Shown: one piece after another, positions 22,301-57,859 of the stretch
How positions within the stretch are numbered: position 1 is the stretch's first letter
Layout of the letters: each line of letters starts with the position of its first letter
IMG/VR virus record: IMGVR_UViG_3300010334_000023
Location: 124,001-188,000 of that record
DNA length: 64,000 bases
Direction: 5' to 3' (one strand)
Made by a program: the position numbers and the translations under genes
Notes under the pieces: generated by a model
The model's database searches: none
Seen by the model: only the letters and a program-made list of their open reading frames with translations
Told to the model about the DNA's origin: nothing

Positions 22301-24466
22301 GTAACGGCTGTGCGTGCTGCTCACATAACCATAGTATCTGGCGGTGCAGGTTATGTGCTGGGAGACGTCTTGGTGTTGCAGCCAGACAGCGACACCAGCG
22401 CTATATCATCGCTGGAGCTCACAGTGACCAACGTGATAACTTCTACAGGTACCATAATATCGGCATCCATCACTCAGTCTGGTGCGTACAAGTATCTGCC
22501 AGCAGACACAGTGTTCCTCACCAATGGAAAAGGAACTGGAGCTGAGATCACAGTAGATTGGGGAGTGCGGAGCGTGATCGCTGCTTCTCAGGGTACCTAT
22601 AGCCTCAAGCCAGATCAACCTATCGCACAATCCACCAGCTCTGGTTATGGCCTTGGTGCCACATTTGATGTGCTTTGGAGCGCAGTCAAGTCTACCAACA
22701 CATACACTGCCTCAGGTACACAAAATCAATTTGTCATAGATGTTGCTCCCATCAACAACGATGCCAACCTTCTGTTGGTAACCAGCAATGGTCAGGTACT
22801 CAATGCCAGCAACAGTGACATCACAGTCAATGGCAAGATAGTGACCATCACACCAACACCCACGGCAGGATCTACGGTGAGCATAACCGTGTTCAGCACT
22901 GCAAACTACAGCGTGGTGAACGATCAAGAGATAGTGATACAATATCAAATCTACAGCTATGCGTTGAATGAACCACCAGCCAGCACCCTGCCACCCTATC
23001 TCAGCACCACCGTAGCCTACGATGGTTATTATCTGCGAGGTCCGCAGATGGATGTCTACAGTGCCAGTGGCTATAACAACAGCTTCCCGGTTAGCTTTGT
23101 GCCTCCTGATCCTGCCAATCTGTTGGTATACGTACAGGATTATCTACAGACCTACAATGTTGACTACGTGATCTCTGGCAACAATGTGCTGTTTAATAAC
23201 ATACCTATAGCCAACGAAGTGATAGCTATGGTGGTGGTTGATCCGCTCTACGGATACAATTACCTCATAGGGAACCAAAGGATAGATTTGGTTTATGACC
23301 CACCTGTGAGTTGGAACCAAGGCTATTGGGACAACTATTTTGGATGGGATAGTGAGTATCAGAATCCCACTGCAGGCAGCATCGTCAAGGTAATCACCTA
23401 CAGCGAAGATGTCAGTTATCAGTTCAGGACACAGACTGAGCATGGTCCTTGCTATCCAAATGTTCCGGGTAACACACCTGGTACCTATGTGCTGATAACT
23501 CCGCCATATGACGACAGCACTCTCATGGTATGGCTCTATGATATCATGCAGACTCTGTTGTATGACTATTCCGTGATTACCGTAGATGCCATCCCAGGCT
23601 GGGGCATCACTCCGTGGCAGACCTATGGTTGGCAAACAGAATACCGTGGTGACAAAGCTGTGGTGTTTGCTCCTGGCAAGGCTGTGCTGCCTGGTGATGC
23701 TATCAGCATGCAATACATGACCGCTCTGCCTGAACGTTTGCCAATAGCCTGGCGCACCATAACTACCGGTGATCAGACTACCAGCACAGTGATCAGCGAT
23801 GCCAACAAGACCATATTGCTATCCACTGTATACTCTTACAGCACCAGCATTGAAGTCTTGGATGCCAGCGTGCTTGACCAACCCACTGACACTCAGCCTG
23901 GAACCATCTGGATAGGAGATGAGAGGATCAACTACTGGATGGTAGAACCTGCACCAGTTACGGCCGCATCAAACCGTGCGTTCTTGACACAGCTGATACG
24001 CGGCACCTATAACACTCCTAGTGGCAATGTCTCAGTGGGATATGACACCATATTCTATGATGGCAACGGCACGCAGACTTATTTCCCCACAGCTAGTGGC
24101 ACCCTACCTCCCGGAGGCAACGTGGCAGTGTTCGTGGGCAACCAGATACAGGTCGACTCTGCCATCAACTCCAATGTTGGTACATATATCATAGCAGAGA
24201 ATCCTCAGGGCCAGCGCCCCGGTACCTATGTGGTCTTTGCTAAGCCACCTGCGGTAGGATGGAGGAACGTGCGACTGAGCAGTCCTCGATCAGAGGTACC
24301 TGTGACCAGCCAGATCAGCCATGTGCAGGGCAGCACGGTTTTAGCTGCTGGCGCCGCAGAGACCATACCTGGTGGTTATCAATGGATAGCTGCTCCTAAC
24401 GGGCTGCAGTATGCCTCCTCAAGCCTAGCTAGATTCCTCTTAGAACACAGCGGAACACGCACATAA
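13361..24466 (+). CDS. Giant (3701 aa) baseplate wedge / fibre-platform protein (gp7-like position)
   Basis: Uninterrupted ORF after gp6-like gene; YLNEVKPYHAKIR wedge-type motif; repeated beta-sandwich modules (FGTGNRKVFTL, YDGNGTQTYF and similar); six triple-aromatic motifs. Confidence 0.75.
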   Translation: MVEKRRVISLLPAVNQTDTLTKFFSATVDHLFQPESVEFLSGYIGSKPPYYNAKTDFYVGEPTKSRQDYQLPVSAISANTYSGKVTNIMFYHDFVNSLLFQGAVTANQTRLFEQVYYSWSPPIDPDKLINFTKYYWVPVGPAPILLLNPTNLRQDAVGKPHYTYQGAYQLTGTSEIKVGSLVFSTGLVVTPTSDATGSINGTAYIINNVGRSIQLLTLDGFVDPNWDTRGWDTQGWDGDASIYVKDYTTIGRGPNPSNQWSINNRWFHEDVLLVSGTGTFPPYQTRAARPIIEFDYDLQLYNSGNRGRPSVTLIASDIADVMGTIVGQTSYTINGLELRDGYTLLVTGDADPLVNNRVYQVGGLSTLGVITLTQVGGAPAYGDAILVRYGTVAATQTISYTAPVQYWYDGTAWKRAQQRVPSVAPLFNLYDQYGNALDDPSVYSSSTFAGNSIFTYALDQYAVIDTELGIQIKLDQFGDYVFNNTLVTDTYTYVSDGSVVAIPGFAYYRNNASVAQYNNAWYRSPVPSRQYIVNDFTVNLPTAQFTIDQVPDPHPGPLPSIYVYLIYGGSSHLLVNDVDYTVSANVVTLTVPALSGQRVLVRSWNGTAAPINTVGYYELPLNLTANPDNEQVGNVGYSQFLQQFSSIIGNQPGLIGNALGNNNWRDTSKIRGLGLSILQHKAPMIKPMILSSGNITVGINTVMNHTEPMQAMQYAQNQYVRFYNRFIQSLYTLSANGFTANQQPSEWVSAALRQINLGKTPASPWANSGPDGPKAGYTYLRSTAPTWVPPTGTRLGITKAYIPTVYIQGLDLWIQCHDGARFVMAKDGLPLGSISYGLTSTSDPLLLTDPVAGAWLQFELDLFNNMPDAYSDSQAIMAFDITAYTPGRWRQGNYTRSEFLQVTYPIFDRWVITYQADYRANTTYDVNDPFTWNYSNLRDSDGGLVPGYWQGIYRWYYDTDRPHLAPWEMLGFSQQPPWWTEEYGPAPYTRGNTYMWSDLAAGRIRQGPRAGIYLPGVRPGLLSCIPVDAQGKLLPPTEAGCVVGLPSVAQAAAPWVYGDGSPVESVWIYSNEYTFVTAQYSYLMKPAQFIEYNWDTLRQQTVFADQPTAQTIYIDTDNRRPNNQLYVHRENPSAIGGNLNIPNESTLSYYGSGGVQHWITEYIVGQNLNVTQYFGSIVRGTVAQLAHQAGGFVTSNLYLTVDSFGQIGYTSQIIPSENVKTYLYKSASIRESYYSGVILTQVKDGWRVVGYDAIDQFFTIIPSNKYGSKTTIVVGNDRVYWYKVGVTAAQQISYGTVFNTKQEVFDFLISLQRYQEFQGFMFDQYNSDGNTTLDWLQAGREFLLWSQGNWANGNFIALSPLAIQVKYVQPFGTVQFVNGVVGGTYPVIDKLGQRIDGQNLEVLRYDDTITITATGMQNIYGMRLFANTLESVLVLDNRTSFDDTVYDPLYNLYQPRLRLYAYRTNDWDGRVDAPGFFLYQAGADNQWTLVTNFEKTANDFTKYFNIDQPKNHETIDPVTGNAVIVSTELAAVDNQVISDLSKHQIGYQHRPYLANLLLEESTEFQFYQGFIKQKGTLKAFDAILRNQAIVPPGSHYDYYEEYALRTSRFGSTAINTGIDFIVPQNQYINDPQQIQVFGLQNNDREYNGIITLIPHDPLILVPPISYSSENDPLFPLRTTTVPNYTTDLPTAGYVLIGETTFTAANTAVLSTFWETQNIAGNPIVNGDTVWQFIDNKQTWNVWKFSTANVNIVNTTPSIVTGQPTVINCSGNVGLKTGDLVVLDGISNVTALQGSFYVGNIVGDGRSFTVPVNTFTVGAGGNITAYKSTRFSTTQQRNRYPPLNGWQPGDISYVDVTDYGINGWTVYQYLNNSWIAIRAETYDVDASLMLQAKLYSESQGTVYTYPEYYDPAKGFIPSEARKNLDRISMYDPASYNTGNVDIINLDPMRAWGPEHIGETWWNLSSVRYLDYEISSNAYRWQNWGKIAPGTSVDVYEWVQSPVSPDMWASYVANQQDFTQFGINYTPTGTVYNSSDPAYTQVTAYNANGVSQSLYYFWVAGAITLPLPAGRSVTTVQISKLLTNPNAYGLPWYAAIDARTIVVSGIGRYLSGTDTVLSLLYTHKTNQQIDYKQYDLVRAKDPDSIPEDFFWLKLKDSLTGKDGQDENVPDPYLSDIMRNGTLIRPRQSWFKYRVIAAETYVAEANKLLGTILLVPDINRGSWVNYFYRVQPPPSSDYNVGTLSSMYALGGTIPSGSTITVLAGPDTQNLWKQYQYQFNDGKYLYTELAVQAYNTPNYWYYVDWYLPNSGVTSTTVVNYTVPTDADRTAYQGVNGLLIKVLNRGDGYWAIYEWIGTAATGSWVTVGYQNGTIQISTGVYDGSINTMLFGTTPFDSTGFDIFPHVEFGNIIDGLRYAIFNNPNPAVPGESVYLNQLFFAMIDYVLVEQGFVDWLFKTSFIYLRGFNIPLTTSQLYQPDYGEALLSYLNEVKPYHAKIRQFVNSRSWTDNALISTTDFDNPSNASVTTNIAYSSAAWEQNYLTNPELIRTLKIKMLFDRVSSVARGWDRTSWSSYGWDATSVPSQGAFHRIQTYYAPTADMIRKDDPALIPGADFRGIIMDALGFTFAPGWQLTPWDSPTGWDAGEDAFTAYHDILVQGGIAPEYDKYFGTGNRKVFTLSRIPQDPAHVVVWADSMLAQYGVDWVIPNSVSGLQLVSAGQDYQIGDQLYLEFSPVVAPTNITVTGIDDQGGITAWTINSSGSYDIFTGQAIPVAYQPYSMGAGSGASFSAVWSGNTLVFYTAPSSNASPNVFVLYVGTTFLPAPTGPLDIVNDGNNFIEPYVQSDHPEELYTTKLPWGMRIDTYQQPVGGSPLIYMRIYQLDGKRDHFPLGIAPMDQSAVIAQIDGKMLTYGLENDYVINWTTNTMVFLEAPTGVSLQILTIGVGGSGTGIVSPKVVSYGIGYQPGDVVYLAGGVTVNNDAASVQVTAVRAAHITIVSGGAGYVLGDVLVLQPDSDTSAISSLELTVTNVITSTGTIISASITQSGAYKYLPADTVFLTNGKGTGAEITVDWGVRSVIAASQGTYSLKPDQPIAQSTSSGYGLGATFDVLWSAVKSTNTYTASGTQNQFVIDVAPINNDANLLLVTSNGQVLNASNSDITVNGKIVTITPTPTAGSTVSITVFSTANYSVVNDQEIVIQYQIYSYALNEPPASTLPPYLSTTVAYDGYYLRGPQMDVYSASGYNNSFPVSFVPPDPANLLVYVQDYLQTYNVDYVISGNNVLFNNIPIANEVIAMVVVDPLYGYNYLIGNQRIDLVYDPPVSWNQGYWDNYFGWDSEYQNPTAGSIVKVITYSEDVSYQFRTQTEHGPCYPNVPGNTPGTYVLITPPYDDSTLMVWLYDIMQTLLYDYSVITVDAIPGWGITPWQTYGWQTEYRGDKAVVFAPGKAVLPGDAISMQYMTALPERLPIAWRTITTGDQTTSTVISDANKTILLSTVYSYSTSIEVLDASVLDQPTDTQPGTIWIGDERINYWMVEPAPVTAASNRAFLTQLIRGTYNTPSGNVSVGYDTIFYDGNGTQTYFPTASGTLPPGGNVAVFVGNQIQVDSAINSNVGTYIIAENPQGQRPGTYVVFAKPPAVGWRNVRLSSPRSEVPVTSQISHVQGSTVLAAGAAETIPGGYQWIAAPNGLQYASSSLARFLLEHSGTRT

Positions 24467-24469
24467 ATA
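24462..24469 (+). promoter_or_regulatory. Late promoter CATAAATA overlapping the stop codon of the giant gene
   Basis: TAAATA core ends 5 nt before ATG 24475. Confidence 0.65.
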
Positions 24470-24474
24470 ACACC

Positions 24475-24609
24475 ATGACTGATGAAAACACACGCGATAA
24501 ACAACAAGAAATCACACAGCCAGACGAGGATGGAACCGTGATGGTATATGGTTTCCTTCAGATTAAAGATGCCAAGACTGGTGAAGTCTTGATAAGCACG
24601 AGGTCGTAA
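24475..24609 (+). CDS. Small 44-aa protein missed by the ORF track (MTDENTRDKQQEITQPDEDGTVMVYGFLQIKDAKTGEVLISTRS)
   Basis: Fills the intergenic gap exactly, follows a late promoter, and resembles the N-terminus of the next gene. Confidence 0.75.
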   Translation: MTDENTRDKQQEITQPDEDGTVMVYGFLQIKDAKTGEVLISTRS

Positions 24610-36262: not shown

Positions 36263-37352
36263 TTACTCTGAGATTACTAGCGTGCACCTCGAACTTACCA
36301 GCAAGTGCAATGCCAGCTGTCCCATGTGCGCACGCAACAAGTTTGGCGGGCCAGAGAATGAGTTCCTGCCTCAAGCAGAACTGAGCCTGACTGATATACA
36401 GCGCATCATGCCCGAGGCATTCGTGAGGCAGCTGAGCAGGCTCTACATGTGCGGCAACTATGGAGATCCCATCGTGGCCAATGACATGCTGGAAGTCTAT
36501 CAGTGGCTGCGCAAGGTCAATCCCAGCATCAAGCTGGGACTGCACACCAATGGTGGTGCCAGGACTCCCACATGGTGGAGCAATCTGGGCATTGTGCTCA
36601 GTGCCAAGGGCGATTACGTGAAGTTTGGCATAGATGGCTTGGAGGATACCAACCACATCTATAGGCGCGGTACCAACTGGTCCAAGATCATGGACAATGC
36701 CAAGGCCTTCATAGCTGCAGGCGGTATTGCCCAGTGGGAATACATCGTGTTCAAGCACAACGAACATCAGGTGGATGAAGCCCGTGCGCTGAGCGAGCAG
36801 CTGGGCTTCGCACAGTTCCGCACCAAGAAGACAGGTCGCTTCTTCAGCAACACTAGGTTACAAGGCAAGGACAGCCAAGAGGTATGGAACCGCAATGGCA
36901 TGGTGGAGTATCTCTTGGAGAAACCAACCAACGAGCTCTATCACAATGACAGCTTGATCAAGGAACAGAGCCTGGTGGACCGCTTTGGCAGCATGCAGGC
37001 CTACGTGGATCAAACCTGCGTGAAGTGCAAGGTTGGCGAGGAAAAGAGCCTGTACATCTCAGCAGAAGGTCTGGCATTTCCTTGCTGTTGGACGGCTAAC
37101 CAGCTGTATGTTTGGTATTGGCCCCACAAGCAGAGCGAGATGTGGACGCTGCTGGATCATGACACTCACAACGTGAACGCCCTGGAAAACACACTAGAAT
37201 CTATAATAAATGGTCCATATTTCAATAAGATAGCTGATAGCTGGTCAAAACCCAGCATCAGTGATGGCAAGCTGAGAGTATGTGCCAAAACCTGCGGAAC
37301 TGGGTTCGATCAGTTCGCTAGCCAATTCACGGAAGCTGTAAATAGATCATGA
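36246..37352 (+). CDS. Radical SAM protein with C-terminal SPASM/twitch-like Cys domain
   Basis: CNASCPMC (CX3CX2C), GNYGDP, HTNGG, GIDGL; C-terminal CKV...YISAEG.AFPCC...CAKTC. Confidence 0.9.
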   Translation: MNMIYDYSEITSVHLELTSKCNASCPMCARNKFGGPENEFLPQAELSLTDIQRIMPEAFVRQLSRLYMCGNYGDPIVANDMLEVYQWLRKVNPSIKLGLHTNGGARTPTWWSNLGIVLSAKGDYVKFGIDGLEDTNHIYRRGTNWSKIMDNAKAFIAAGGIAQWEYIVFKHNEHQVDEARALSEQLGFAQFRTKKTGRFFSNTRLQGKDSQEVWNRNGMVEYLLEKPTNELYHNDSLIKEQSLVDRFGSMQAYVDQTCVKCKVGEEKSLYISAEGLAFPCCWTANQLYVWYWPHKQSEMWTLLDHDTHNVNALENTLESIINGPYFNKIADSWSKPSISDGKLRVCAKTCGTGFDQFASQFTEAVNRS

Positions 37353-38814: not shown

Positions 38815-39183
38815 ATGGCAAGTTCCCCCAAGAAGCCAGTTGATAAAGCCGCTGATGCGGTCTGGGAAGACATATTCAACAATCTTACCATTGAGAACGA
38901 ACCTCCCACTAGATACATCAAGAGCGTGATCATACAGACCAAAGACGGGTCAGTGCTCAAGGTAAGTGGTCGAAGCTTTGCTGAGATCATAGAGCAAGAA
39001 CGCCATCTCTCTCCTGGACAGAGCGAGATATACAGCTGCAGGATGACCATCAATTTTCCCAAGCTGCGTGCGGATGTGGAAACATGGTGCGGTGATCTGT
39101 TTACCGAGTTAAACACATCTGACAGCTACAAGGTGACGGTTAAATCCAAGCGCAAAGCTGCCAAGAAGACAAAGCATGATTGA
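38815..39183 (+). CDS. Hypothetical protein
   Basis: ATG after late promoter; basic C-terminus. Confidence 0.6.
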   Translation: MASSPKKPVDKAADAVWEDIFNNLTIENEPPTRYIKSVIIQTKDGSVLKVSGRSFAEIIEQERHLSPGQSEIYSCRMTINFPKLRADVETWCGDLFTELNTSDSYKVTVKSKRKAAKKTKHD

Positions 39184-39208
39184 CTAGTTTCTACGGATTA
39201 GTCATACT
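39180..39208 (+). promoter_or_regulatory. Sigma70-type promoter TTGACT-N17-CATACT, 5 nt before the thyX ATG (leaderless geometry)
   Basis: Direct sequence; no Shine-Dalgarno between -10 and ATG. Confidence 0.6.
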
Positions 39209-39213
39209 ATATC

Positions 39214-39864
39214 ATGACAGTCAAGCTCATAGCCATATCACAACCGACCATTGACGAATGCACCACAGCTGAAGAGCTGGTGGCATACTGTGCCAGGGTC
39301 TCAAACCCAGCCAACCAAGACAACCATGGTACCAGCGCCAAGCTGATACGATACCTCATAAAAAACGCACATTGGTCTCCCTTGGAGATGGTACACATGA
39401 CCATGGAGATCAACACCACACGTGACATAGCAAGGCAGATACTGCGACATCGCAGCTTCAGCTTCCAGGAGTTCAGCCAGCGCTATGCCGACCCTACCAA
39501 GAGCCTGGGTTTCGTAACCAGAGAAGCACGCCTGCAGGATGCCAAGAACCGGCAAAACAGCATCGAAGTTGACGATGCTGAACTGGCTGATCTGTGGACT
39601 GGCATGCAGGAGTTAGCCATAGAAAATGCGCAGAGGCAGTATACCAAAGCAATCAACATGGGTATTGCCAAGGAACAGGCCCGTGCGCTGCTGCCAGAAG
39701 GTCTAACAGAGAGCCGTATCTATATGGCAGGCAGCCTCCGCAGCTGGGTACACTACTGTGATCTGCGCCGTGCTAACGGTACCCAGAAAGAACATCGCGA
39801 GATAGCAGAAGCCTGCTGGAGCATCGTGGTTGATCAATTCCCCATGCTAGGACAAGGAGATTGA
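39214..39864 (+). CDS. thyX: Flavin-dependent thymidylate synthase
   Basis: HWSPLE, RQILRHRSFSFQEFSQRY (RHRxxxxxxxS signature), EQARALLP, TQKEHR. Confidence 0.96.
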   Translation: MTVKLIAISQPTIDECTTAEELVAYCARVSNPANQDNHGTSAKLIRYLIKNAHWSPLEMVHMTMEINTTRDIARQILRHRSFSFQEFSQRYADPTKSLGFVTREARLQDAKNRQNSIEVDDAELADLWTGMQELAIENAQRQYTKAINMGIAKEQARALLPEGLTESRIYMAGSLRSWVHYCDLRRANGTQKEHREIAEACWSIVVDQFPMLGQGD

Positions 39865-39865
39865 C

Positions 39866-47711: not shown

Positions 47712-47817
47712 ACCTTGACCTAAAGCTGTCTCGGAATGCTGACCAGAGATCTGGATTGACCACGTAGCAGGGATTGTCGCTTGGTAACGCAGGGCTCTGT
47801 GTGTGTTTCCATTTCAT
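47626..47817 (-). CDS. Small hypothetical protein
   Basis: ATG 6 nt after a TATTGT -10 element. Confidence 0.5.
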   Translation of the reverse strand: MKWKHTQSPALPSDNPCYVVNPDLWSAFRDSFRSRFGFGPAEKPIYTEAFCAQWMDHEVPVEQ

Positions 47818-47823
47818 AGTCAC

Positions 47824-47851
47824 ACAATAACAGATTATCTGAGACTGTCAA
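47824..47851 (-). promoter_or_regulatory. Sigma70-type early promoter TTGACA-N16-TATTGT
   Basis: Same architecture as neighbouring promoters. Confidence 0.6.
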
Positions 47852-48267
47852 GCGTGTTTTTTGAAGTTCACGAACTGTTGTGCGCTGCCATCCACCATCT
47901 GTAGCTCAAAGTGTAACATTGGCTCAAACACTATCAGGCTCTTGCCTCGCACCGCCCATGGTCCTCGCAGAGCATCTTCTAAGCCCAGCAGCACTCGTCC
48001 TGTCATGATGTTGTTGTCGTCGCTGTTGGCCACGTAGCTGTTGTATCTCTCTCCAAGCAGCTTGAGACCAGCTGACGTGAGCCGCCATCCTTGATTAACA
48101 AACAGTGCTTTTCGCAGCCTGGCTATAGCATGGTCAGTCAAGGGATCTTCCGGATCGATGAGCCTGGCTTGATAGCAGATATCGATGCCGTGTTTGGTCA
48201 ACCAAACATAGGGACCCTGAGGTCCGAGATCGCGGAGATCACCATGGGGCCAATCTGTCTTTTCCAC
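47848..48267 (-). CDS. Hypothetical protein
   Basis: Intact ORF; TAAATA 4 nt upstream of GTG. Confidence 0.6.
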   Translation of the reverse strand: MEKTDWPHGDLRDLGPQGPYVWLTKHGIDICYQARLIDPEDPLTDHAIARLRKALFVNQGWRLTSAGLKLLGERYNSYVANSDDNNIMTGRVLLGLEDALRGPWAVRGKSLIVFEPMLHFELQMVDGSAQQFVNFKKHA

Positions 48268-48283
48268 CCATTATTTAATGGGA

Positions 48284-48505
48284 TTAGAACCTGCCGCCGT
48301 CCTGTTTTACCTCAGCAGTGAGGATCTGCTGCTGTAGATCGATGATCTTTTGGTTCATCTCGTTCTCACGCGACAGCATCACAGCAATGCTTGCGCTGAG
48401 GAGATCAGCTTCGTGCATGGTCAACCGGATCTCTCTGCTGTTGCTGATCTTGGCTACTCTGTGCTTTTCAAGGAAAGATCTAACTTGGTTCTTTTCGTCC
48501 GTCAT
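48284..48505 (-). CDS. Hypothetical protein
   Basis: ATGA coupling; ends DGGRF. Confidence 0.65.
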   Translation of the reverse strand: MTDEKNQVRSFLEKHRVAKISNSREIRLTMHEADLLSASIAVMLSRENEMNQKIIDLQQQILTAEVKQDGGRF

Positions 48506-48981
48506 GCTTTGCTGATCCTTTTCTTTTGGCTCATGGCATTCTGCATCTCCAGCTTGGTGCGGAACGGGCCTATGAACTCATTCTCTTCCAAGGTCTGTGT
48601 GCGCGGGCAGTAGCTGCCAGTCCAGCCATGTTCAAAATCCAACGCATAGTATCCCGCAGCGAATCTGGCCTTGCCCTTGGCGGTCTTAGCATAGGTAACT
48701 ATAGCACCTTCTTCCACATCAAACACTGCCTTGTGCTTGATTGGATAGCCGTTGATCTGGCCAATCTCATCGTCCTTGTCGTCATCAGTTTCACGTGCTT
48801 CTATCTGCAGGTTACCACCTAGAAAAGCAGTTAGCTCGTCGGCGTCTGCGAACAGCTTGCGATCAAACGGACCAATGACCTTGAAGCCTTCCACAGTTAC
48901 AGTGACCAACCCAGCATTGCTGCCATCCTTTTCAAGGATGTAGCTGGCTTCCGTGATTTCCTTTAGCTTGTAGCTGCTCAT
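48502..48981 (-). CDS. Hypothetical phage protein
   Basis: ATGA coupling to the nuclease gene; FAAGYY...CP...FIGPFRTK. Confidence 0.7.
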   Translation of the reverse strand: MSSYKLKEITEASYILEKDGSNAGLVTVTVEGFKVIGPFDRKLFADADELTAFLGGNLQIEARETDDDKDDEIGQINGYPIKHKAVFDVEEGAIVTYAKTAKGKARFAAGYYALDFEHGWTGSYCPRTQTLEENEFIGPFRTKLEMQNAMSQKKRISKA

Positions 48982-49967
48982 GCTGTTTCCATCCTCAGTT
49001 GCCCATCGTATTGTGCACTGAAACAGGGTGCGAAGTCATTCACGTTCTTTTCGATCCTGACCAAGCCGTTGATGTTGCAGTAGCGCATGAGGGCCAGTCC
49101 GATCTGCTTCTTGACTGATTGGTTGACTTCGTCGATGATCAGCCTGTCAAACTTGTCTATGAGATCCAACGGCTGTTGAGTTAGGTCGATCAACATGCGA
49201 TTTCTCTCGTAGTCGTCCCGCACTCTGTGTTCTACATTCTCGTGATCTAACCACTTGCTAAGCATGAGGTTATTCCACGCATATCCGCGATTATGTCGGT
49301 CTTCGTAGGCAGCTTCTAGCTTGGTCTTGCGCACACCTGGGAACGCACTCATCACGTTGTCGCTGTCATCCCCGCGCATGCACTTTTCAAACAGTATCCA
49401 TTCTGGATTTGGCACAGGCATTGGCTTGCCTTGCTTGTTGATTGCCAGCTTGCCATCTTGATCATAGATGCCTGTGTGAGTGTATAGCAGGCTAGCTATG
49501 CCATTGTATAGTATGACATTTTCTGCGATCAGCTGCTGGAAATCACTGTCGCTGCTGATGATCACGTGCTTGTCATCTGGATGCAGCTGTATCCAGCGTG
49601 CGATCATGTCGTCTGCTTCAGCGTTTGGATGGCGCAGCACCGTGCAGTTGGTCTTGTTCTTGATGAATTCCACGAATCCATCCATGCTTTCGAAAAACAG
49701 CTGGTCTTCTTCGATTTCTCGTTCTGTGCGTTTGGCAGCTGCTACCTTGCGGTTTGCCTTGTATGGCGTATACACATCCTTGCGCCAGCTTCGTCCTTCC
49801 AAGCAGAAAACGGTATGGCTGCCACTGAATTCTGTCCATACCTTCTTGATGCTGTTGAATATTATGTGCTGCGCCATGCCCAACTGAAGTTCAGTGCTAG
49901 GAGCTCTCACACCATGGCGCACTCTCATGAATAGGTTCTGAGTATCAATTATTAGATAAGTTGCCAT
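48978..49967 (-). CDS. rnh: T4 RNase H-like 5'-3' exonuclease / flap endonuclease
   Basis: LIIDTQN, SWRK..Y..YKANR, EADDMIA, ISSDSDF.QL, GDDSDNV; GGAGG RBS. Confidence 0.9.
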   Translation of the reverse strand: MATYLIIDTQNLFMRVRHGVRAPSTELQLGMAQHIIFNSIKKVWTEFSGSHTVFCLEGRSWRKDVYTPYKANRKVAAAKRTEREIEEDQLFFESMDGFVEFIKNKTNCTVLRHPNAEADDMIARWIQLHPDDKHVIISSDSDFQQLIAENVILYNGIASLLYTHTGIYDQDGKLAINKQGKPMPVPNPEWILFEKCMRGDDSDNVMSAFPGVRKTKLEAAYEDRHNRGYAWNNLMLSKWLDHENVEHRVRDDYERNRMLIDLTQQPLDLIDKFDRLIIDEVNQSVKKQIGLALMRYCNINGLVRIEKNVNDFAPCFSAQYDGQLRMETA

Positions 49968-49983
49968 GCTCGCCTCCATCCTG

Positions 49984-50011
49984 AGTATAGCACAGCTGCG
50001 ATCTATGTCAA
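49984..50011 (-). promoter_or_regulatory. Sigma70-type promoter TTGACA-N16-TATACT
   Basis: Near-consensus with TGC before the -10. Confidence 0.7.
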
Positions 50012-50014
50012 CTG

Positions 50015-50596
50015 TTAGTTCTTGCGCCAGTACCAACCATCGTTGGCAACCATGCGCACCTGCTTGCTGGGTATACCCTGGGCTTTGGCCCAGCTGGTAA
50101 CTGCGAAATTAACTGAAAACAGGTTAGCATCATGTCCAGCGACCAATCCGCCTGGGCGCACTTTTGGTACCCAGCTGTCCAAATCGGTTAGAACCTGCTT
50201 CATGCTGTGACCACCATCTATGAACACGAAATCATATGCTTGGTCTTCCAGCAGTGCTGCGGCTTTTTGGCTGTCTTCGCGTATGAAGTTGAACCTGTCG
50301 CCCATCAGAGGTAGGTTGGCCTGCAGTATGGCATAGTTGGCTTCTGCTTCCATCCTGCTCACTGGTTTGTCCCAGTCGTGATAGGGTGCGTAATGATCAA
50401 TGCCTGTCAGCATGGCTATGTTTGGACATTCGTTGAGCATGAACCAGCTGTTGATACCAAGACCCACACCTATCTCGATGCCTATAGCAGGATAGGGCAT
50501 GCTCTTTAGCTCGTCCAGGATGCCTCTGCTGGCCTGCTGCCTATAGATGCGAGGCCAATCCGGGCTGTCAAACAGTGTTGTAAGTGTCTGGTTCAC
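50015..50596 (-). CDS. Class I SAM methyltransferase (Methyltransf_24-like)
   Basis: EIGVGLG, GIDHY, DFVFIDGGH, PGGLVAGHD; CATAAATA 4 nt upstream. Confidence 0.8.
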   Translation of the reverse strand: MNQTLTTLFDSPDWPRIYRQQASRGILDELKSMPYPAIGIEIGVGLGINSWFMLNECPNIAMLTGIDHYAPYHDWDKPVSRMEAEANYAILQANLPLMGDRFNFIREDSQKAAALLEDQAYDFVFIDGGHSMKQVLTDLDSWVPKVRPGGLVAGHDANLFSVNFAVTSWAKAQGIPSKQVRMVANDGWYWRKN

Positions 50597-50611
50597 CCTG
50601 TATTTATGGTA

Positions 50612-51205
50612 TTAGCTATGCTCGGTCTTACCATCCTCTCGCCGAATGCGACGAACATTGCTGACAAACTCTGGATCAGTGGGGGCCATCTCTGCTAGTA
50701 TGCTGTTACAGACATCGTTTAGCCAGCGGTTGATCACGTCCTCGTCGCTGCCCTGATAGTTATTAGCTCGCAGAGACTGCACGAATGCATCGTTGTAATC
50801 TAGCTCAAAGAAGGTCTTGCTGGGATCAACCGGGTCCCAGCTGATCTTGGGCATGGCCATGTAGGGTTCGTTCTTGATGTCTGCGGCCTTGCGTTCGTGT
50901 TCTGGTGCGCTTATGCGATTGTGCTTGAGTTCCACATCCAGCTTGGCCAGTGCCAACGCAGTCTCGTCAGAGTTGTCTAGTTCTGCCAATCTGCTATCGC
51001 GATCATAGGCGCTGATCTTGCCGTAAGCCAGATCGATGTCCAACACGCTCTTGGTAAAGGCCGGGCTATCTAGCCCGTGGCCGATCCGGGCCTTGGCAAT
51101 GTCTAGATCATAGCCTGTGAGATAGTATTCAGCTTCTGCCAGTTCTCGGCTCTTGCCTTTTAGTCCCCAGGCAGCTGGTAACCAACCAAACGGTATCTTG
51201 CTCAT
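50612..51205 (-). CDS. Hypothetical phage protein
   Basis: Start at MSKIPFGWLP; FFELDYND...INRW. Confidence 0.65.
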   Translation of the reverse strand: MSKIPFGWLPAAWGLKGKSRELAEAEYYLTGYDLDIAKARIGHGLDSPAFTKSVLDIDLAYGKISAYDRDSRLAELDNSDETALALAKLDVELKHNRISAPEHERKAADIKNEPYMAMPKISWDPVDPSKTFFELDYNDAFVQSLRANNYQGSDEDVINRWLNDVCNSILAEMAPTDPEFVSNVRRIRREDGKTEHS

Positions 51206-51207
51206 GC

Positions 51208-52119
51208 TTATCTTCCTATCACGTTGCTGAAGATCCAGCAGTGTATGCGAGCTGCTACGTTGTAGCCGCGCTTGAGCGCTTCTTCCGTGACCCACATCTG
51301 CACGTCTTCCTGTTCTTCTCGAGTAGCCCCCACAGGCATGACCCACACTGGCCAGTTCACGTCTGCTGCGCGGAAAGCATCAACTGCTCGCTCTAGTTCA
51401 TCCCAGGTCAGTGGATTCTTGTCAAGCACGAACTTCAGCTGTCCGTGATTGCTGATCAGCCTGTATTCGCGCACGATCTCTGGCTTGATAGCATCTGTCC
51501 AGCTCTCGCCTGAAGTGCCCAGCTTGGGGCTCACGCTCCAGAACAGCTCGCCATTGTACATGCCGCGATTGTTAAAGAACTCATCAAAGTTCTTGCGCAC
51601 AGCCTGCGTGCCGTTGGTCTCTATGGTGATGTGGCGAGGCATGTCCATCTGCATGCGAAGCGTCTGCATGATGTCCACGATGCCTGTCTGGCTCATCATG
51701 GGTTCGCCGCCGGTGAATGCTAGATGCACGTCCTGTCCGCTGCGAGGATGCACAAATGATCCTCCCTGCAGCCTGCTGCGAAAATCTGCGCAGATCTCTT
51801 CTGCTGTGCTCTGATGTGCCAGATGGCCATACTTGGTGCTCCAGCTGTAGCTGCTATCGCAGCCAGTTGTCCACACCGGCAGATCATCCATCTTGGTGAT
51901 GCCGTTGGCCTGAGGGTCGTATTCCTGATAATCTAGCTTGTAGGTGCTGCGATCTCTGGGATTAGCCTGTCCAAATCCGTCACAGTTGAAGTTGCAGCCC
52001 CAGAAGCGTATCCAAACTGTGGGATGACCAGCATACCTGCCTTCGCCCTGTATGGTAGGAGTAGGACCAGCGTTGCCTCCAAAGGTCTCGCTGTAACGGT
52101 ACTTCTTGGCAGTGCTCAT
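51208..52119 (-). CDS. queE: 7-carboxy-7-deazaguanine synthase (radical SAM)
   Basis: TIQGEG..AGHPTVWIRFWGCNFNC...CDS, FTGGEP, IETNGT, SVSPKL, RIH; clustered with queD and folE. Confidence 0.9.
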   Translation of the reverse strand: MSTAKKYRYSETFGGNAGPTPTIQGEGRYAGHPTVWIRFWGCNFNCDGFGQANPRDRSTYKLDYQEYDPQANGITKMDDLPVWTTGCDSSYSWSTKYGHLAHQSTAEEICADFRSRLQGGSFVHPRSGQDVHLAFTGGEPMMSQTGIVDIMQTLRMQMDMPRHITIETNGTQAVRKNFDEFFNNRGMYNGELFWSVSPKLGTSGESWTDAIKPEIVREYRLISNHGQLKFVLDKNPLTWDELERAVDAFRAADVNWPVWVMPVGATREEQEDVQMWVTEEALKRGYNVAARIHCWIFSNVIGR

Positions 52120-55646: not shown

Positions 55647-56170
55647 GCTACGGTATCCTGACCATATGCCGTCCACGGTGTGAAAGTCTTTCGATCCATG
55701 AGATCATGCAGGCTATGCACCCAGACTCCTGGATTGGATGCTTTGAAGCCCGTGTCATCGATCTTCACGCAGGTGTTGTAGTTGGCCAAGCCTGCGTATG
55801 GTAATTTCACAGAGATCTGCGGTATGAACTGGCTGTGGCTGATAGCACTCATCTCAGCAACACCCAGCCAATGTTCGAGATCAAAGTCCAATGTGACCCA
55901 GTAACCTCGATCCAGCAGTGCTACACAGAGGTCATCCCAGCTCTTCCAGGCATCGTAATCTTCGTAACCACTCACTTTGAAGCTTTGGTTAGCACCCAGA
56001 TAGATGTGCTTGCAGACCCTGTATCGAGCCGTGTCAGCAACGTCGTCCACATCCTGCCGACCAACCACGAACAGCGTGTGTGCGCCCTTCATCGGAGTGT
56101 TTTCTACTTCGTAGCCCGTGAAGTACTTCACGTCTGTCTTTACGCCATCAATGTAATCTCGTTCCATCAC
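55643..56170 (-). CDS. Hypothetical enzyme-like protein in the deazaguanine cluster
   Basis: Coupled to the dpdA-like stop; FTGYEVE..TLFVV, HIYLGANQSF, WVTLD, KIDD..F.ASNPGVW. Confidence 0.7.
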   Translation of the reverse strand: MMERDYIDGVKTDVKYFTGYEVENTPMKGAHTLFVVGRQDVDDVADTARYRVCKHIYLGANQSFKVSGYEDYDAWKSWDDLCVALLDRGYWVTLDFDLEHWLGVAEMSAISHSQFIPQISVKLPYAGLANYNTCVKIDDTGFKASNPGVWVHSLHDLMDRKTFTPWTAYGQDTVA

Positions 56171-57825
56171 ATGTCCTCCACGCTCATTGACACATCGTTG
56201 TTGGCATCCATGCCTGTGATGCTCTGCAGCATCTTCTCATGCTTCATTATCAGATCCATGGGGCGTTCACTGGTAAAGATGTCCTCTACTAGATCCTTGA
56301 ACTCCAGCAGATCTGGTGTCAGCAGTTCCTTGGCTTCGCTGATTGGTCTGTCCTGTGCCATGTTGGCTGCCTGTATGGCATTGACATGCAGTTCAGTGTT
56401 GTGGTTCATGGCCAATAGGTAGCTGAAACCATCCATGCTGCTAGGCCACTTCTCTTGATACTTGCTGTGGCTGTCAGCAAAGCGTGCTGTGCCGAGATCA
56501 AACACGCCGCCGTTCTCGTGGCTGTGTATGGCGTACTCCTTGTAGGCTTTGGTCCACTTGAACGGATCATTGGCCTTGCCTTCGGGAGTTGAAGCCCAGT
56601 AGCCGCTTTCGATTTCTTTCTTGGTAAAAGCTACCTTCTTGCTTTCAAGGTCATCATAGCCCCTGCAGCAGATGTCTCCCACGCTGACCTGATCGCCTAT
56701 CCTGCTGCGCACTGGCGTTAGCTTCTTGGGCAGGTTGTTGGCAATCCAATCGTTGAGCAGCTGTGGGTTGTTCTTCAGCTCTTTCTTGTCCACGATTGGA
56801 CCGCCCTTGAAGCCAACATTGTCCGCGCTGAGCTCATGTCCGTAGTACATCTGTCCCTTAGCAGTCATCACAAACGGGCTGGCTGCGTCGAAGCTGATGG
56901 TCAGCTGTGGATCCACATGCTTCCGCAGCGCACGCTGCAGGGATGTGAGAGCACAGCCAGCCTTGATCTTACCGTTACCCAGATAGTGCAGCCACTCACG
57001 TCCTGAGAGATAGTTTTCATCTCTCATGATGATCAGTCTGCGCAGATTAATGGTGAAGTTACTTGCCTGCACGTTGGAGAACGCCCAGCTCTCAAAGGGC
57101 AGGTCCTTGGTGTGCTCCCACCACACGTCACCTTCTTCCATGTTGCGTCCCTGTAGGACGTTGAGGAACTTGGTGGCACCCTCCCTGCGATTCTTGATGA
57201 AGAAGTTGTGGTTGTCCAGGCTGCCAGTCAAGCAATCGCTGAAGCTCTTGAGGCTGGGATGCAGACTCTCGCCTGTGACTGGATCAAGACCATATTTGAC
57301 CAATGCGTAGGTAGGCCAGTCCAATACCATGCTATAGTCTGCCGTGGCTTCTAGCCAACGCAGCAGCTTCATTCGCACATCGTCCTTGTCGTTCTGATGT
57401 TCTTCCGGTGTCTGCTTGGGCTTGGCATGCCATGGATACTTGAGCACACCGGTAGCAGCTTGGAACCCACCTGAATCGCCTAGCAGCACAGTGTTAGCGC
57501 GATCGCGCTGCTGCACCATGCTCTCCTGCACCCAGCTATCCTGCGGATCCAGTATGGCATGTCCAGCTGAATACAGTGCTACTGGATAGTAGAAAAGGCT
57601 GTTAGCGGGATCGAGGAAGTTGAGATCCTTGAGTCCCTGTGGCAAGCCCTCGGGCATGGTGTCGCGCATGTTGTACTGAACCATGCTGACGATCTTGGCA
57701 TAGATCATGCTGATGCTGGGCAAGAACAGGGCATAGTCATTCTGCGTAGCGGCCATGTTCCTGCACTTTGCGTTGAAAGTGAGGTGGTCAGTGTCAAAGC
57801 TGAATCTCTGGAAATCTTTTTTCAT
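56167..57825 (-). CDS. dpdA: TGT-fold guanine transglycosylase, probably DNA-acting (DpdA family)
   Basis: LGDSGGFQ, MVLDWP, NVLQG, HYLG, SFDAASP and late HN match TGT catalytic motifs; no canonical CxCxxC zinc site; clustered with folE/queD/queE in a phage. Confidence 0.8.
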   Translation of the reverse strand: MKKDFQRFSFDTDHLTFNAKCRNMAATQNDYALFLPSISMIYAKIVSMVQYNMRDTMPEGLPQGLKDLNFLDPANSLFYYPVALYSAGHAILDPQDSWVQESMVQQRDRANTVLLGDSGGFQAATGVLKYPWHAKPKQTPEEHQNDKDDVRMKLLRWLEATADYSMVLDWPTYALVKYGLDPVTGESLHPSLKSFSDCLTGSLDNHNFFIKNRREGATKFLNVLQGRNMEEGDVWWEHTKDLPFESWAFSNVQASNFTINLRRLIIMRDENYLSGREWLHYLGNGKIKAGCALTSLQRALRKHVDPQLTISFDAASPFVMTAKGQMYYGHELSADNVGFKGGPIVDKKELKNNPQLLNDWIANNLPKKLTPVRSRIGDQVSVGDICCRGYDDLESKKVAFTKKEIESGYWASTPEGKANDPFKWTKAYKEYAIHSHENGGVFDLGTARFADSHSKYQEKWPSSMDGFSYLLAMNHNTELHVNAIQAANMAQDRPISEAKELLTPDLLEFKDLVEDIFTSERPMDLIMKHEKMLQSITGMDANNDVSMSVEDM

Positions 57826-57830
57826 GTTTC

Positions 57831-57859
57831 AGTATGGCCTATGGCGGTGATCTTGTCAA
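57831..57859 (-). promoter_or_regulatory. Sigma70-type promoter TTGACA-N17-CATACT, 5 nt before the dpdA ATG (leaderless geometry)
   Basis: Direct sequence; identical geometry to the thyX promoter. Confidence 0.6.

What the first reader, a model, noticed from the sequence alone, without database searches (positions are those of the whole stretch)
24462..57859. Repeated leaderless-mRNA geometry for both promoter classes
Seen: late TAAATA followed by only 4-5 nt and a start codon at 24475, 37349, 48267 and 50596; sigma70-type -10 followed by 5-6 nt and ATG at thyX (39214), dpdA (57825) and 47817, with no Shine-Dalgarno in between. thyX and dpdA share the same CATACT-N5-ATG layout. Inference: transcription starts at or next to the start codon, so the phage uses leaderless translation for key nucleotide genes, possibly to stay translated under stress or host shut-off.
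Basis: partly seen in the sequence, partly recalled or inferred. Interest (0 to 1): 0.6.

Follow-up and report, generated by a model that had tools for sequence, protein, structure and literature searches.

The report
Promoters abutting start codons: leaderless genes
In this roughly half-megabase freshwater phage and its closest relatives, about a quarter of the late promoters and a tenth of the early ones sit so close to a start codon that the mRNA should begin at that codon, with no ribosome-binding site; no RNA 5' ends were available to confirm it.

Summary
It extends across the whole 216-kb record and two complete relatives (518 kb and 453 kb).

**Late class.** TAAATA is a real intergenic promoter box: 58 of 68 copies lie in the 8% of the genome that is non-coding. 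A gp55-like late sigma factor is encoded in the window (1788-2645, minus strand). The distance from box to start codon is bimodal: 4-5 nt with no Shine-Dalgarno (SD), or 15-35 nt with one.

**Early class.** Sigma70-type promoters (TTGACA-N16/17-TAnnnT) show the same split: 5-6 nt versus 16-39 nt.

**Support.**
- The three genomes hold 65 such genes.
- The geometry is conserved in orthologues whose flanking sequence has diverged.
- Family models and orthologue N-termini support the start codons checked.

**Limits.** T4, Syn9, RaK2, CBB, PA5oct, Atu_ph07 and Phosso show no enrichment, so this is specific to the clade. Transcription starts were not mapped; the only RNA data are contigs from lake metatranscriptomes.

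It is not supported. The set includes the tail tube, virion proteins, a methyltransferase and small ORFs, not only nucleotide genes. The 'dpdA' label fails the HMM tests.

**Verdict.** Probable leaderless mRNAs from both promoter classes; a new variant of known kinds.

The parts
1788..2645 (-). gp55-like sigma factor for late transcription (285 aa), the presumed reader of the TAAATA box
   Evidence: phrog_12791 at 3.3e-84 and phrog_234 (T4-type late sigma) at 1.3e-20. 41% identity over the full length to phage CBB gp244, 'sigma factor for late transcription'. Same synteny as in CBB, next to the baseplate genes and gp47/46-like genes.
24464..24477 (+). Late box TAAATA (24464-24469; its TAA is the stop codon of the 3701-aa gene), 5 nt, then ATG 24475 of a 44-aa ORF (24475-24609)
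   Evidence: No SD. The ORF is conserved (57-59% identity), with TAAATA + 4 nt + ATG in G006 and G001.
37339..37351 (+). Late box TAAATA inside the 3' end of the upstream radical SAM gene, 4 nt, then ATG 37349 (overlapping that gene's TGA) of a twitch-domain radical SAM gene (37349-38743)
   Evidence: NF033640 at 5e-123, with model position 1 at residue 7. The geometry is kept in G006 (about 90% relative) but absent in G001, so this is the weakest of the late sites.
39180..39216 (+). Sigma70-type promoter: TTGACT (contains the TGA stop of the upstream gene), N17, CATACT, 5 nt, then ATG 39214 of thyX (39214-39864)
   Evidence: 9 of 12 consensus matches. Thy1 at 1.9e-45 and phrog_85 from residue 1. 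No SD. G006 orthologue: TTGATT-N17-AACAAT-5 nt-ATG, with a diverged spacer.
47815..47851 (-). Sigma70-type promoter: TTGACA (47851-47846), N16, TATTGT (47829-47824) with TG in the extended -10 position, 6 nt, then ATG 47817 of a 63-aa ORF (47626-47817)
   Evidence: 10 of 12, TG present. G006 and G007 keep TTGACA-N16-TAnnAT-6 nt-ATG and the peptide MKWKH, with diverged spacers.
48265..48277 (-). Late box TAAATA (48277-48272), 4 nt, then GTG 48267 of a 139-aa ORF (47848-48267)
   Evidence: TAAATA + 4 nt + GTG is conserved in G006 and G007, although the first 60 residues are only 47-48% identical.
50594..50606 (-). Late box TAAATA (50606-50601), 4 nt, then GTG 50596 of a methyltransferase gene (50015-50596)
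   Evidence: Methyltransf_24 at 1.5e-18. TAAATA + 4 nt + GTG is conserved in G006, G007 and G001.
57823..57859 (-).
   Evidence: 10 of 12. Seven distinct orthologous promoters at 75-92% protein identity keep TTGACA-N17-CATA(C/A)T-5 nt-ATG while the spacer and the 5 nt diverge. Orthologues at 64-66% identity (L025/L026, L029) instead carry a 19-20-nt leader with weak SD-like purine runs (identities).
2759..2792 (+). Contrast case: a leadered late promoter. TAAATA 2759-2764, then a 25-nt leader with SD, then ATG 2790 (virion structural protein)
49965..50011 (-). Contrast case: a leadered sigma70-type promoter. TTGACA-N16-TATACT, then a 16-nt leader with GGAGG, then ATG 49967 (exonuclease)
   Evidence: 11 of 12.

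Best explanation
The phage belongs to the T4 superfamily of jumbo myoviruses and runs two promoter classes. Early genes use host sigma70-type promoters (TTGACA, 16-17 nt, often TGn, then TAnnnT). Late genes use a T4-type box, TAAATA, read by the gp55-like sigma factor encoded at window 1788-2645.

In each class a minority of promoters is placed so that the predicted +1 nucleotide is the first base of the start codon: 4-5 nt after TAAATA, or 5-6 nt after the -10 hexamer. The resulting mRNAs would have no 5' leader and no SD. Ribosomes would have to start on the 5'-terminal AUG (in two window genes, GUG).

Shown here: the motif geometry, its statistics, the lack of SD, the gp55 homologue, conservation in relatives, and authentic N-termini. 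Inferred: the transcription start positions and the mode of translation.

The arrangement also makes the whole promoter fit into gaps as short as 8-30 nt. In several cases the upstream gene's stop codon lies inside the -35 hexamer or inside the TAAATA box.
For: 1. **TAAATA is a promoter-type element.**
- This record: 68 copies, 58 of them intergenic, although only 8% of the sequence is intergenic (binomial p about 3e-53).
- G001: 204 copies against 708 expected from base composition, 116 of them intergenic.
- G002: 149 of 198 intergenic.
- The box precedes tail sheath, portal, baseplate and other virion genes.
- Related phages CBB and GAP32 have a predicted late motif ATAAATA and a gp55-like sigma (PMC5259590).

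2. **The gp55 homologue lies in the window**.

3. **Spacing to the called start is bimodal.**
- G000: 11 genes at 4-5 nt, one each at 7 and 12 nt, nothing at 0-3, 6, 8-11 or 13-16 nt, then about 30 genes at 17-35 nt.
- G001: 21 genes at 4-5 nt and nothing at 0-3, 6 or 8-14 nt.
- G002: 18 genes at 4-5 nt.

4. **SD presence follows the spacing.**
- An SD core is present in 0 of 12, 1 of 23 and 0 of 18 close-spaced genes.
- It is present in 27 of 32, 42 of 60 and 39 of 55 leadered ones (Fisher p = 3e-7 in G000).

5. **The T4 late box spans -13 to -6** (PMC2988020). A 5-nt gap therefore puts +1 on the A of ATG.

6. **Sigma70 class, summed over the three genomes:** 15 genes at 5-6 nt, 1 at 7-15 nt, about 116 at 16-39 nt.

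7. **Conservation.**
- All seven window sites keep their geometry in at least one relative with about 90% protein identity, with changed flanks.
- The 552-aa gene keeps it down to 75% identity.
- 5 of 9 late close-spaced genes stay so between G000 and G001 (median protein identity 64%); promoter class never swaps between orthologues.

8. **The start codons are authentic.**
- ThyX and the radical SAM models align from residues 1-7.
- Tail-tube homologues align from residue 6.
- Only 3 of 65 genes have a downstream in-frame start with a good SD.

9. **17 of 65 genes have a divergent upstream neighbour.** The tail-tube gene in G000 and G001 follows a terminator hairpin, so no leadered read-through transcript is expected there.

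10. **The first 45 nt of these genes are less structured** (mean MFE -4.1 against -5.8 kcal/mol, p = 4e-4) and richer in A.
Against: - No 5' ends were mapped. The only RNA data are low-depth assembled contigs from two lake metatranscriptomes, which cannot show starts.
- 48 of 65 genes have an upstream gene on the same strand, and 19 have gaps of 20 nt or less. Read-through transcripts with translational coupling could also serve those genes.
- Two window genes start with GTG. In E. coli a GUG start is poor for leaderless translation (my own knowledge, not tested here).
- With a 4-nt gap, strict T4 numbering puts +1 on the second base of the codon, so start-site flexibility has to be assumed.
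- The thyX promoter alone (9 of 12 matches) is no better than many chance matches in the generic scan, which found 25 sites against 18 +/- 4.5 in shuffles.
- Gene calls come from my own simple caller, not a validated program.
Confidence: 0.7

Rival explanations
1. The promoters are real, but the genes are mainly translated from longer polycistronic transcripts. Initiation there would be by termination-reinitiation (coupling) or by SD-independent initiation on an A/U-rich, unstructured junction. The promoter abutting the start codon would then mostly serve downstream genes.
For: 48 of 65 close-spaced genes have a same-strand upstream gene, and 19 have gaps of 20 nt or less. In the window the gaps are 8, -4 (overlap), 16 and 15 nt at the four late sites. 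At 24464 the TAA of the box is itself the upstream stop codon.
Against: 17 of 65 genes have a divergent upstream neighbour, and 31 have gaps over 40 nt. The tail-tube gene follows a terminator. Coupling does not explain why the exact hexamer sits at exactly 4-5 nt, nor why offsets 8-11 nt (G000) and 8-14 nt (G001) are empty. The TAA of the box is the upstream stop in only 2 of 11 cases in G000.
Confidence: 0.17
2. Start codons are mis-assigned. The true starts lie downstream behind ordinary ribosome-binding sites, so the transcripts have short leaders inside what is now called coding sequence.
For: Starts were chosen by my own caller. Three of 65 genes do have a downstream in-frame start with an SD of 5 nt or more within 40 codons. 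One of these is the 44-aa ORF at 24475, and that alternative lies at codon 38.
Against: - Family models and homologues align from residues 1-7 for thyX, the radical SAM protein and the tail tube.
- The N-terminal peptides are conserved as protein across relatives (MKKDFQRF / MTNTFKRF; MKWKH; VNQTLT / VTQTLA).
- In G033 an extra codon is accommodated so that the 5-nt gap is kept.
Confidence: 0.05
3. TAAATA next to the start codon is not a promoter there. Instead it is an SD-independent translation signal (an A/U-rich ribosome or S1 landing site) or an RNA-processing site.
For: The motif is A/U-rich and sits where a ribosome-binding site would be. Nothing here directly excludes a dual role.
Against: The same hexamer sits 15-35 nt upstream of SD-led late and structural genes, too far away to act as a ribosome-binding site. 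A gp55 homologue is present. The independent sigma70 class shows the same two-mode spacing.
Confidence: 0.05
4. The juxtapositions arise by chance in a compact genome.
For: The generic sigma70 consensus scan is not significantly enriched over shuffles (25 against 18 +/- 4.5).
Against: 11 observed against 0.11 expected in G000, and 21 against 0.94 in G001. Pattern against reversed-pattern control: 41 against 5 in G002 and 11 against 3 in G000, while T4, Syn9, RaK2, CBB, PA5oct and Atu_ph07 show none. The geometry is conserved in orthologues.
Confidence: 0.01

Closest known systems
T4-type late promoters (TATAAATA box read by gp55; the predicted ATAAATA late motif of Rak2-like jumbo phages CBB and GAP32)
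   Same: A/T-rich box at the -10 position with no -35 element needed. A gp55-like sigma is encoded. The box precedes virion genes. The core TAAATA is identical (PMC2988020; PMC5259590).
   Different: Only the last six of the eight T4 positions are conserved here. About a quarter of the boxes abut a start codon (4-5 nt). No such enrichment is seen in T4, Syn9, RaK2, CBB, PA5oct, Atu_ph07 or Phosso. Every late box in a 50-kb stretch of CBB has a 25-38-nt leader with SD.
Classical leaderless phage and bacterial mRNAs (lambda cI from PRM; leaderless genes of Actinobacteria, Deinococcus and archaea)
   Same: A -10 element 5-7 nt upstream of the start codon, no SD, and a 5'-terminal start codon. By my recollection lambda PRM has TAGATT + 6 nt + ATG (not checked here). 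In mycobacteria leaderless transcripts are common (PMC4633059, listed; I did not read the paper).
   Different: - Here the feature occurs in a lytic jumbo phage whose other genes use strong GGAGG-type SDs.
- It occurs in two promoter classes, one of them a phage-sigma class.
- It covers abundant structural proteins.
- It is frequent: 65 genes in three genomes.
- The two jumbo phages with mapped starts show no leaderless transcripts: phiKZ had none detected (PMC8244752) and AR9 has UTRs of 26-491 nt (PMC5312081).
PA5oct / Atu_ph07 / Phosso / Rak2-like jumbo myoviruses (nearest cultured relatives)
   Same: Portal 44-51% identical. Shared features include the tail sheath, tail tube, baseplate module with a giant structural protein, and gp55-like sigma.
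   Different: No nucleotide-level similarity. Their tail-tube genes have ordinary leaders, and TAAATA-N4-5-ATG is not enriched. PA5oct promoters are described as TTGAC / TATAATA (PMC7318152).

Membership tests
Leaderless mRNA | The primary 5' end of the transcript coincides with the start codon (or lies within a few nt of it) | not testable with these tools
   Only assembled contigs from two lake-water metatranscriptomes hold the region. Contigs cannot show starts.
Leaderless mRNA | The promoter's -10-position element ends 4-7 nt upstream of the start codon | tested here: met
   All seven window sites. 65 genes in three genomes, with bimodal spacing.
Leaderless mRNA | No Shine-Dalgarno sequence upstream of the start | tested here: met
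   An SD core is present in 1 of 53 close-spaced late genes, against 108 of 147 leadered late genes, across three genomes.
Leaderless mRNA | Start codon is AUG (required in E. coli; GUG tolerated in some other bacteria, from my own knowledge) | tested here: inconclusive
   Five window sites are ATG. 48267 and 50596 are GTG, and the GTG is conserved in relatives. Overall 47 of 50 late close-spaced genes use ATG.
Leaderless mRNA | The annotated start codon is the real one | tested here: met
   Model and homologue alignments start at residues 1-7. N-terminal peptides are conserved. Only 3 of 65 genes have an alternative SD-led start. No proteomic data.
T4-type (gp55-dependent) late promoter | The phage encodes a gp55-family sigma factor | tested here: met
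   Window 1788-2645 (minus strand): phrog_12791 at 3.3e-84 and phrog_234 at 1.3e-20; 41% identity to CBB gp244.
T4-type (gp55-dependent) late promoter | TATAAATA box at -13 to -6 | tested here: inconclusive
   The six-base core TAAATA is invariant by construction of the search and strongly intergenic. The two 5' positions are not TA in most copies, as in the ATAAATA motif of CBB. Position relative to +1 is not measurable without mapped transcription starts.
T4-type (gp55-dependent) late promoter | Lies upstream of late (virion) genes | tested here: met
   Precedes the tail sheath, portal, tail tube, sheath stabiliser, baseplate and virion proteins.
T4-type (gp55-dependent) late promoter | Co-activator gp33 and sliding clamp gp45 are present | not tested
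   Not searched. The record is only about 42% of the genome.
Sigma70-type promoter | -35 TTGACA, 16-18 nt spacer, -10 TAnnnT, in intergenic DNA on the coding strand | tested here: met
   The hexamers are conserved while spacers diverge in orthologues. The generic consensus scan alone is not enriched over shuffles.
   - No Pfam, PHROG or NCBIfam hit.
- Neither model hits the genome even at E <= 10.
- No PDB sequence or profile hit.
- The AlphaFold model is unusable, pLDDT 37.
- Two leads remain. Atlas feature neighbours include a TGT-like cluster (0.93) and a DpdA cluster (0.89). An invariant GDSGGFQ motif resembles the TGT catalytic motif, which I recall from memory.
ThyX (flavin-dependent thymidylate synthase) | Match to Pfam Thy1 | tested here: met
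   PF02511 at 1.9e-45; phrog_85 at 6.5e-74.

The most novel reading that the evidence does not exclude
A clade of roughly 0.45-0.52-Mb freshwater phages routinely expresses dozens of genes from truly leaderless mRNAs, made both by host sigma70 RNAP and by a gp55-type late holoenzyme. The set includes abundant virion proteins such as the tail tube, and GUG-initiated genes. This would imply that the host's ribosomes, or ribosomes and initiation factors retuned by the phage, translate 5'-terminal start codons efficiently. One relative, G002, encodes adjacent IF3 and S21 homologues. Leaderless design would then be a way to privilege phage messages late in infection, not merely to save space.
Probability: 0.15. 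Interest if true: 0.8.

Novelty: new variant of a known kind. Interest (0 to 1): 0.6.

Why it matters
- **A new pairing of known parts.** Leaderless mRNAs are seen as rare exceptions in Proteobacteria-type systems, and they have not been reported for T4-type late promoters in the literature I could search. Here a simple, countable sequence rule predicts 65 of them in three huge phage genomes, including a major tail protein.
- **If transcription-start mapping confirms it.** It would give a natural system for studying efficient leaderless initiation, including GUG starts. It would also show how promoter, stop codon and start codon can be packed into 8-30 nt.
- **Practical annotation rule.** In this clade, accept start codons without SD when TAAATA ends 4-5 nt upstream, or a -10 hexamer ends 5-6 nt upstream.

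Tried and rejected
- Megablast of 8 kb of the window against GenBank phages: no match.
- IMG/VR search with the tail-tube protein: only identical copies, so no comparative value.
- Tail-tube upstream regions of PA5oct, Phosso and Atu_ph07: ordinary leaders. They are too distant to test conservation.
- ThyX search in IMG/VR: 80 hits at 61-69% identity from unrelated A/T-rich phages, none with the same promoter layout. The complete relative G001 has no thyX.
- RNA evidence: two lake-water metatranscriptomes hold 37% and 17% of the sampled words of window 45500-51400. They are kept as contigs at depth 2-7 and gave no information on starts or strand.
- Identity of the 552-aa protein: the Pfam, PHROG, NCBIfam, PDB sequence and PDB profile searches, and the PF23859 and PF01702 genome searches, were all blank. 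The AlphaFold2 model built on a 10-sequence alignment had pLDDT 37, so I ran no fold search.
- Host: the phage GroEL is 66-70% identical to GroEL of Beta- and Gammaproteobacteria and some Rhizobiales. This is only a weak hint of a Pseudomonadota host.
- tRNA and Rfam scans of the window: nothing.
- Artefact check: I considered whether the in-box TAA acts as the ORF-opening stop and so creates the offset peak. Rejected, because at offsets 4 and 5 the TAA is out of frame with the start; an artefact would peak at offsets 3, 6 and 9 (reasoned).
- The large protein searches, complex prediction and alternative genetic codes were not used.

Full report
**What the window is.** The window is bases 124001-188000 of a 216,498-bp IMG/VR virus record, estimated to be 42% complete. 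GC content is 50%, and no GenBank phage matches it at the nucleotide level.

The proteins place it in the T4 superfamily of jumbo myoviruses. The portal is 44-51% identical to those of Pseudomonas phage PA5oct, Agrobacterium phage Atu_ph07 (490 kb), Sinorhizobium phage Phosso (469 kb) and Rak2-like phages. The record also encodes a 1362-aa tail sheath, a sheath stabiliser, a tail tube, ribonucleotide reductase and GroEL. The baseplate module with its 3701-aa structural protein is syntenic with phage CBB.

IMG/VR holds four useful relatives:
- G001: 518,643 bp, terminal repeats, complete; median protein identity 64% to this record.
- G002: 452,799 bp, 100% complete.
- G006 and G007: 62-68-kb contigs with about 90% protein identity.

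Two lake-water metatranscriptomes contain parts of the window.

No gene finder was available, so I wrote a simple one. It uses a codon log-odds model trained on long ORFs, greedy non-overlapping selection, and start choice by coding score plus SD and start-codon bonuses. It knows nothing about promoters.

With it the pattern turned out to be genome-wide:
- TAAATA occurs 68 times on both strands of the record. 58 of these lie in the 8% that is intergenic (binomial p about 3e-53).
- The distance from the end of the box to the next called start is bimodal. Six genes are at 4 nt, five at 5 nt, one each at 7 and 12 nt, none at 0-3, 6, 8-11 or 13-16 nt, and about thirty at 17-35 nt.
- In an unbiased tally of every hexamer at every offset before starts, TAAATA at offset 4 ties for first place with SD hexamers.
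- Expected by chance at offsets 4-5: 0.11 genes. Observed: 11.
- None of the 12 close-spaced genes has an SD core, against 27 of 32 leadered TAAATA genes (Fisher p = 3e-7).

The offset peak is not a by-product of the TAA in the box opening the reading frame. At offsets 4 and 5 that TAA is out of frame with the start.

**The sigma70-type class.** Anchoring on TTGAC, a 16-18-nt spacer and a TAnnnT-like hexamer gives a clear intergenic family, often with TGn before the -10 hexamer. Most members are followed by 16-30 nt containing GGAGG or AAGGAG.

Summed over G000, G001 and G002, the distance from the -10 hexamer to the start is 5 nt in 7 genes and 6 nt in 8 genes. Only one gene falls at 7-15 nt, and about 116 fall at 16-39 nt.

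The generic consensus scan of the window is not by itself enriched over shuffles (25 sites against 18 +/- 4.5). The case therefore rests on position, strand and conservation, not on consensus score. The thyX promoter (9 of 12 matches) is the weakest of the three window members; the 57859 and 47851 promoters score 10 of 12.

At thyX, at the 552-aa gene and at a third gene elsewhere in the record (start 15237), the intergenic gap is exactly 30 nt and the upstream gene's TGA stop lies inside the -35 hexamer. At 24464 the TAA of the late box is the stop codon of the 3701-aa gene.

**Relatives.**
- *G001:* 204 TAAATA copies against 708 expected from composition, 116 of them intergenic. 21 called starts lie at 4-5 nt and none at 0-3, 6 or 8-14 nt. 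An SD is present in 1 of 23 close-spaced genes against 42 of 60 leadered ones.
- *G002:* 149 of 198 copies are intergenic, 18 starts lie at 4-5 nt, and an SD is present in 0 of 18 against 39 of 55.

Counts of the pattern TAAATA-N4-5-ATG, against the same pattern read backwards as a control:

| Genome | Pattern | Control |
|---|---|---|
| G002 | 41 | 5 |
| G001 | 31 | 15 |
| G000 | 11 | 3 |
| PA5oct | 20 | 30 |
| Atu_ph07 | 17 | 26 |
| Phosso | 4 | 2 |
| CBB | 7 | 22 |
| RaK2 | 5 | 37 |
| T4 | 10 | 12 |
| Syn9 | 3 | 7 |

In a 50-kb annotated stretch of CBB, every late box has a 25-38-nt leader with an SD. The close-spaced class is therefore specific to this environmental clade.

**Conservation at the seven window sites .**
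- *24475:* the 44-aa ORF is conserved, and both G006 and G001 have TAAATA + 4 nt + ATG.
- *37349:* kept in G006 but absent in G001.
- *thyX:* G006 has TTGATT-N17-AACAAT-5 nt-ATG with a diverged spacer.
- *47817:* G006 and G007 keep TTGACA-N16-TAnnAT-6 nt-ATG and the peptide MKWKH.
- *48267 and 50596:* TAAATA + 4 nt + GTG is kept in G006 and G007, and for 50596 also in G001. The GTG starts are therefore conserved.
- *57825:* seven distinct orthologous promoters at 75-92% protein identity keep TTGACA-N17-CATA(C/A)T-5 nt-ATG while the spacer and the 5 nt change. In one of them an extra N-terminal codon is accommodated without changing the 5-nt gap. Orthologues at 64-66% identity (L025/L026, L029) carry the same kind of promoter followed by a 19-20-nt leader with weak SD-like purine runs. 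This shows a switch between leadered and leaderless layouts.

Across reciprocal best hits, promoter class never swaps. Five of nine late close-spaced genes stay so between G000 and G001, where about 0.3 would be expected by chance. A few switches between close-spaced and leadered occur.

**Are the start codons right?**
- The ThyX models align from residue 1 (PHROG) or residue 15 (Pfam position 5).
- The twitch radical SAM model aligns from residue 7.
- Tail-tube homologues align from residue 6.
- N-terminal peptides are conserved as protein.
- Only 3 of 65 close-spaced genes have a downstream in-frame start with an SD of 5 nt or more within 40 codons.

**How it most likely works.** The window encodes a gp55-family late sigma factor at 1788-2645 on the minus strand. 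CBB and GAP32 have a predicted late motif ATAAATA and a gp55-like sigma (PMC5259590).

In T4 the late box TATAAATA begins at -13 (PMC2988020). The core TAAATA therefore ends at -6, and a 5-nt gap puts +1 on the A of ATG; a 4-nt gap needs a one-base shift of the start. For sigma70 promoters, 5-6 nt after the -10 hexamer is the usual start window. By my recollection lambda PRM, which makes the leaderless cI mRNA, has 6 nt.

The empty zone (mainly 8-14 nt for the late box, 7-15 nt for the sigma70 class) is what one expects if a leader must be long enough to hold an SD and its spacer, or else be absent.

The first 45 nt of the close-spaced genes are less structured (mean -4.1 against -5.8 kcal/mol, p = 4e-4) and richer in A (42% against 36% in codons 2-6). 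This fits initiation on a free 5' end.

Seventeen of the 65 genes have a divergent upstream neighbour. The tail-tube gene in both G000 and G001 sits right after a strong terminator hairpin. For these genes no leadered read-through transcript is expected.

What is shown is geometry, statistics, conservation and the presence of the sigma factor. The transcription starts and the translation mode are inferred.

**Rivals.**
- *Translation from polycistronic read-through transcripts by coupling.* This remains possible for genes with short same-strand gaps: 48 of 65 have a same-strand upstream gene and 19 have gaps of 20 nt or less. It explains neither the exact hexamer at the exact offset nor the divergent and post-terminator cases.
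- *Mis-called starts, a translational role for TAAATA, and chance.* Each is disfavoured by the data above.

- *Supported:* the leaderless inference.
- *Not supported:* the idea that the layout serves key nucleotide genes. The 16 such genes in this record include the tail tube (573 aa), two virion structural proteins, a nudix hydrolase, a nucleotidyltransferase, a methyltransferase, a radical SAM protein, thyX and several small or unknown ORFs.
- *'dpdA':* the 552-aa protein fails every family test. Only feature-space neighbours (a TGT-like cluster at 0.93 and a DpdA cluster at 0.89) and an invariant GDSGGFQ motif hint at a remote TGT-like fold. The structure model was too poor to use.
- *Stress or shut-off rationale:* untested. 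Close-spaced genes have shorter intergenic gaps (median 38-41 nt against 65-68 nt), so compaction is an equally good reason.

**Comparison with what is known.** T4-type late promoters and leaderless mRNAs are each well known. I found no paper joining them. The jumbo phages with mapped starts show no leaderless transcripts: phiKZ had none (PMC8244752) and AR9 has UTRs of 26-491 nt (PMC5312081). PA5oct promoters were described as TTGAC / TATAATA without any mention of leaderless transcripts (PMC7318152).

I therefore rate this a new variant of known kinds, with moderate to high interest. The claim about RNA ends still needs an experiment.

Noticed in passing
G002:C1:86555-87077 (minus strand; relative IMGVR_UViG_3300032315_001715): The 453-kb relative encodes adjacent homologues of initiation factor IF3 (PF00707, 4.4e-28) and ribosomal protein S21 (PF01165, 1.6e-14). 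Neither was found in the complete relative G001 or in this 216-kb fragment, and no IF1 was found in any of the three. This may bear on how start codons are selected.
   Followed up: partly
window 39180-39185, 57854-57859, 24464-24466; genome position 15237 region (L002): Stop codons of upstream genes are embedded in promoter elements: TGA inside the -35 TTGAC(A/T), and TAA inside TAAATA. This gives intergenic gaps of exactly 30 nt (three times in G000, and again in G001 and G002) or 8 nt.
   Followed up: yes
whole record G000, plus G001 and G002: TAAATA is strongly avoided inside genes. G001 has 204 copies against 708 expected from base composition; G000 has only 10 of 68 copies inside coding sequence. 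This suggests selection against stray late promoters.
   Followed up: partly
window 56167-57825 (minus strand): A 552-aa protein conserved in more than 20 IMG/VR contigs (39-92% identity) has no family assignment. It carries an invariant GDSGGFQ motif and has TGT/DpdA-like neighbours in protein feature space. It is flanked by a 365-aa protein with a faint glycosyltransferase-like hit.
   Followed up: partly
window 36246-40339 (plus strand): A cluster of a radical SAM/SPASM protein, a twitch-domain radical SAM protein (NF033640, 5e-123), a 142-aa unknown, thyX, and a P-loop kinase resembling adenylyl-sulfate kinase below its cut-off. It may be a nucleotide or DNA modification module.
   Followed up: no
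window 13361-24466 (plus strand) and 59397 to beyond the window end (minus strand): Two giant genes: a 3701-aa protein that follows the baseplate wedge gene (syntenic with the 3340-aa virion protein of CBB) and a 2343-aa protein.
   Followed up: no
L005:10688-12313 (minus strand; genome 67688-69313): The phage encodes a GroEL (phrog_5725, 3e-174) that is 66-70% identical to GroEL of Beta- and Gammaproteobacteria and some Rhizobiales. This is a weak hint at a Pseudomonadota host.
   Followed up: partly
genome 58478/58479, 99904/99908, 54209/54229 (L004, L005, L007); window 2759 (+) and 2790 (-): Divergent gene pairs share back-to-back or overlapping late boxes, for example the palindrome TATTTATAAATA.
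   Followed up: no
window 45500-51400: Identical sequence (0 differences) occurs in contigs from two lake-water metatranscriptome runs from two studies. The phage, or a near-identical strain, was therefore present in those RNA libraries; DNA carry-over cannot be excluded.
   Followed up: partly
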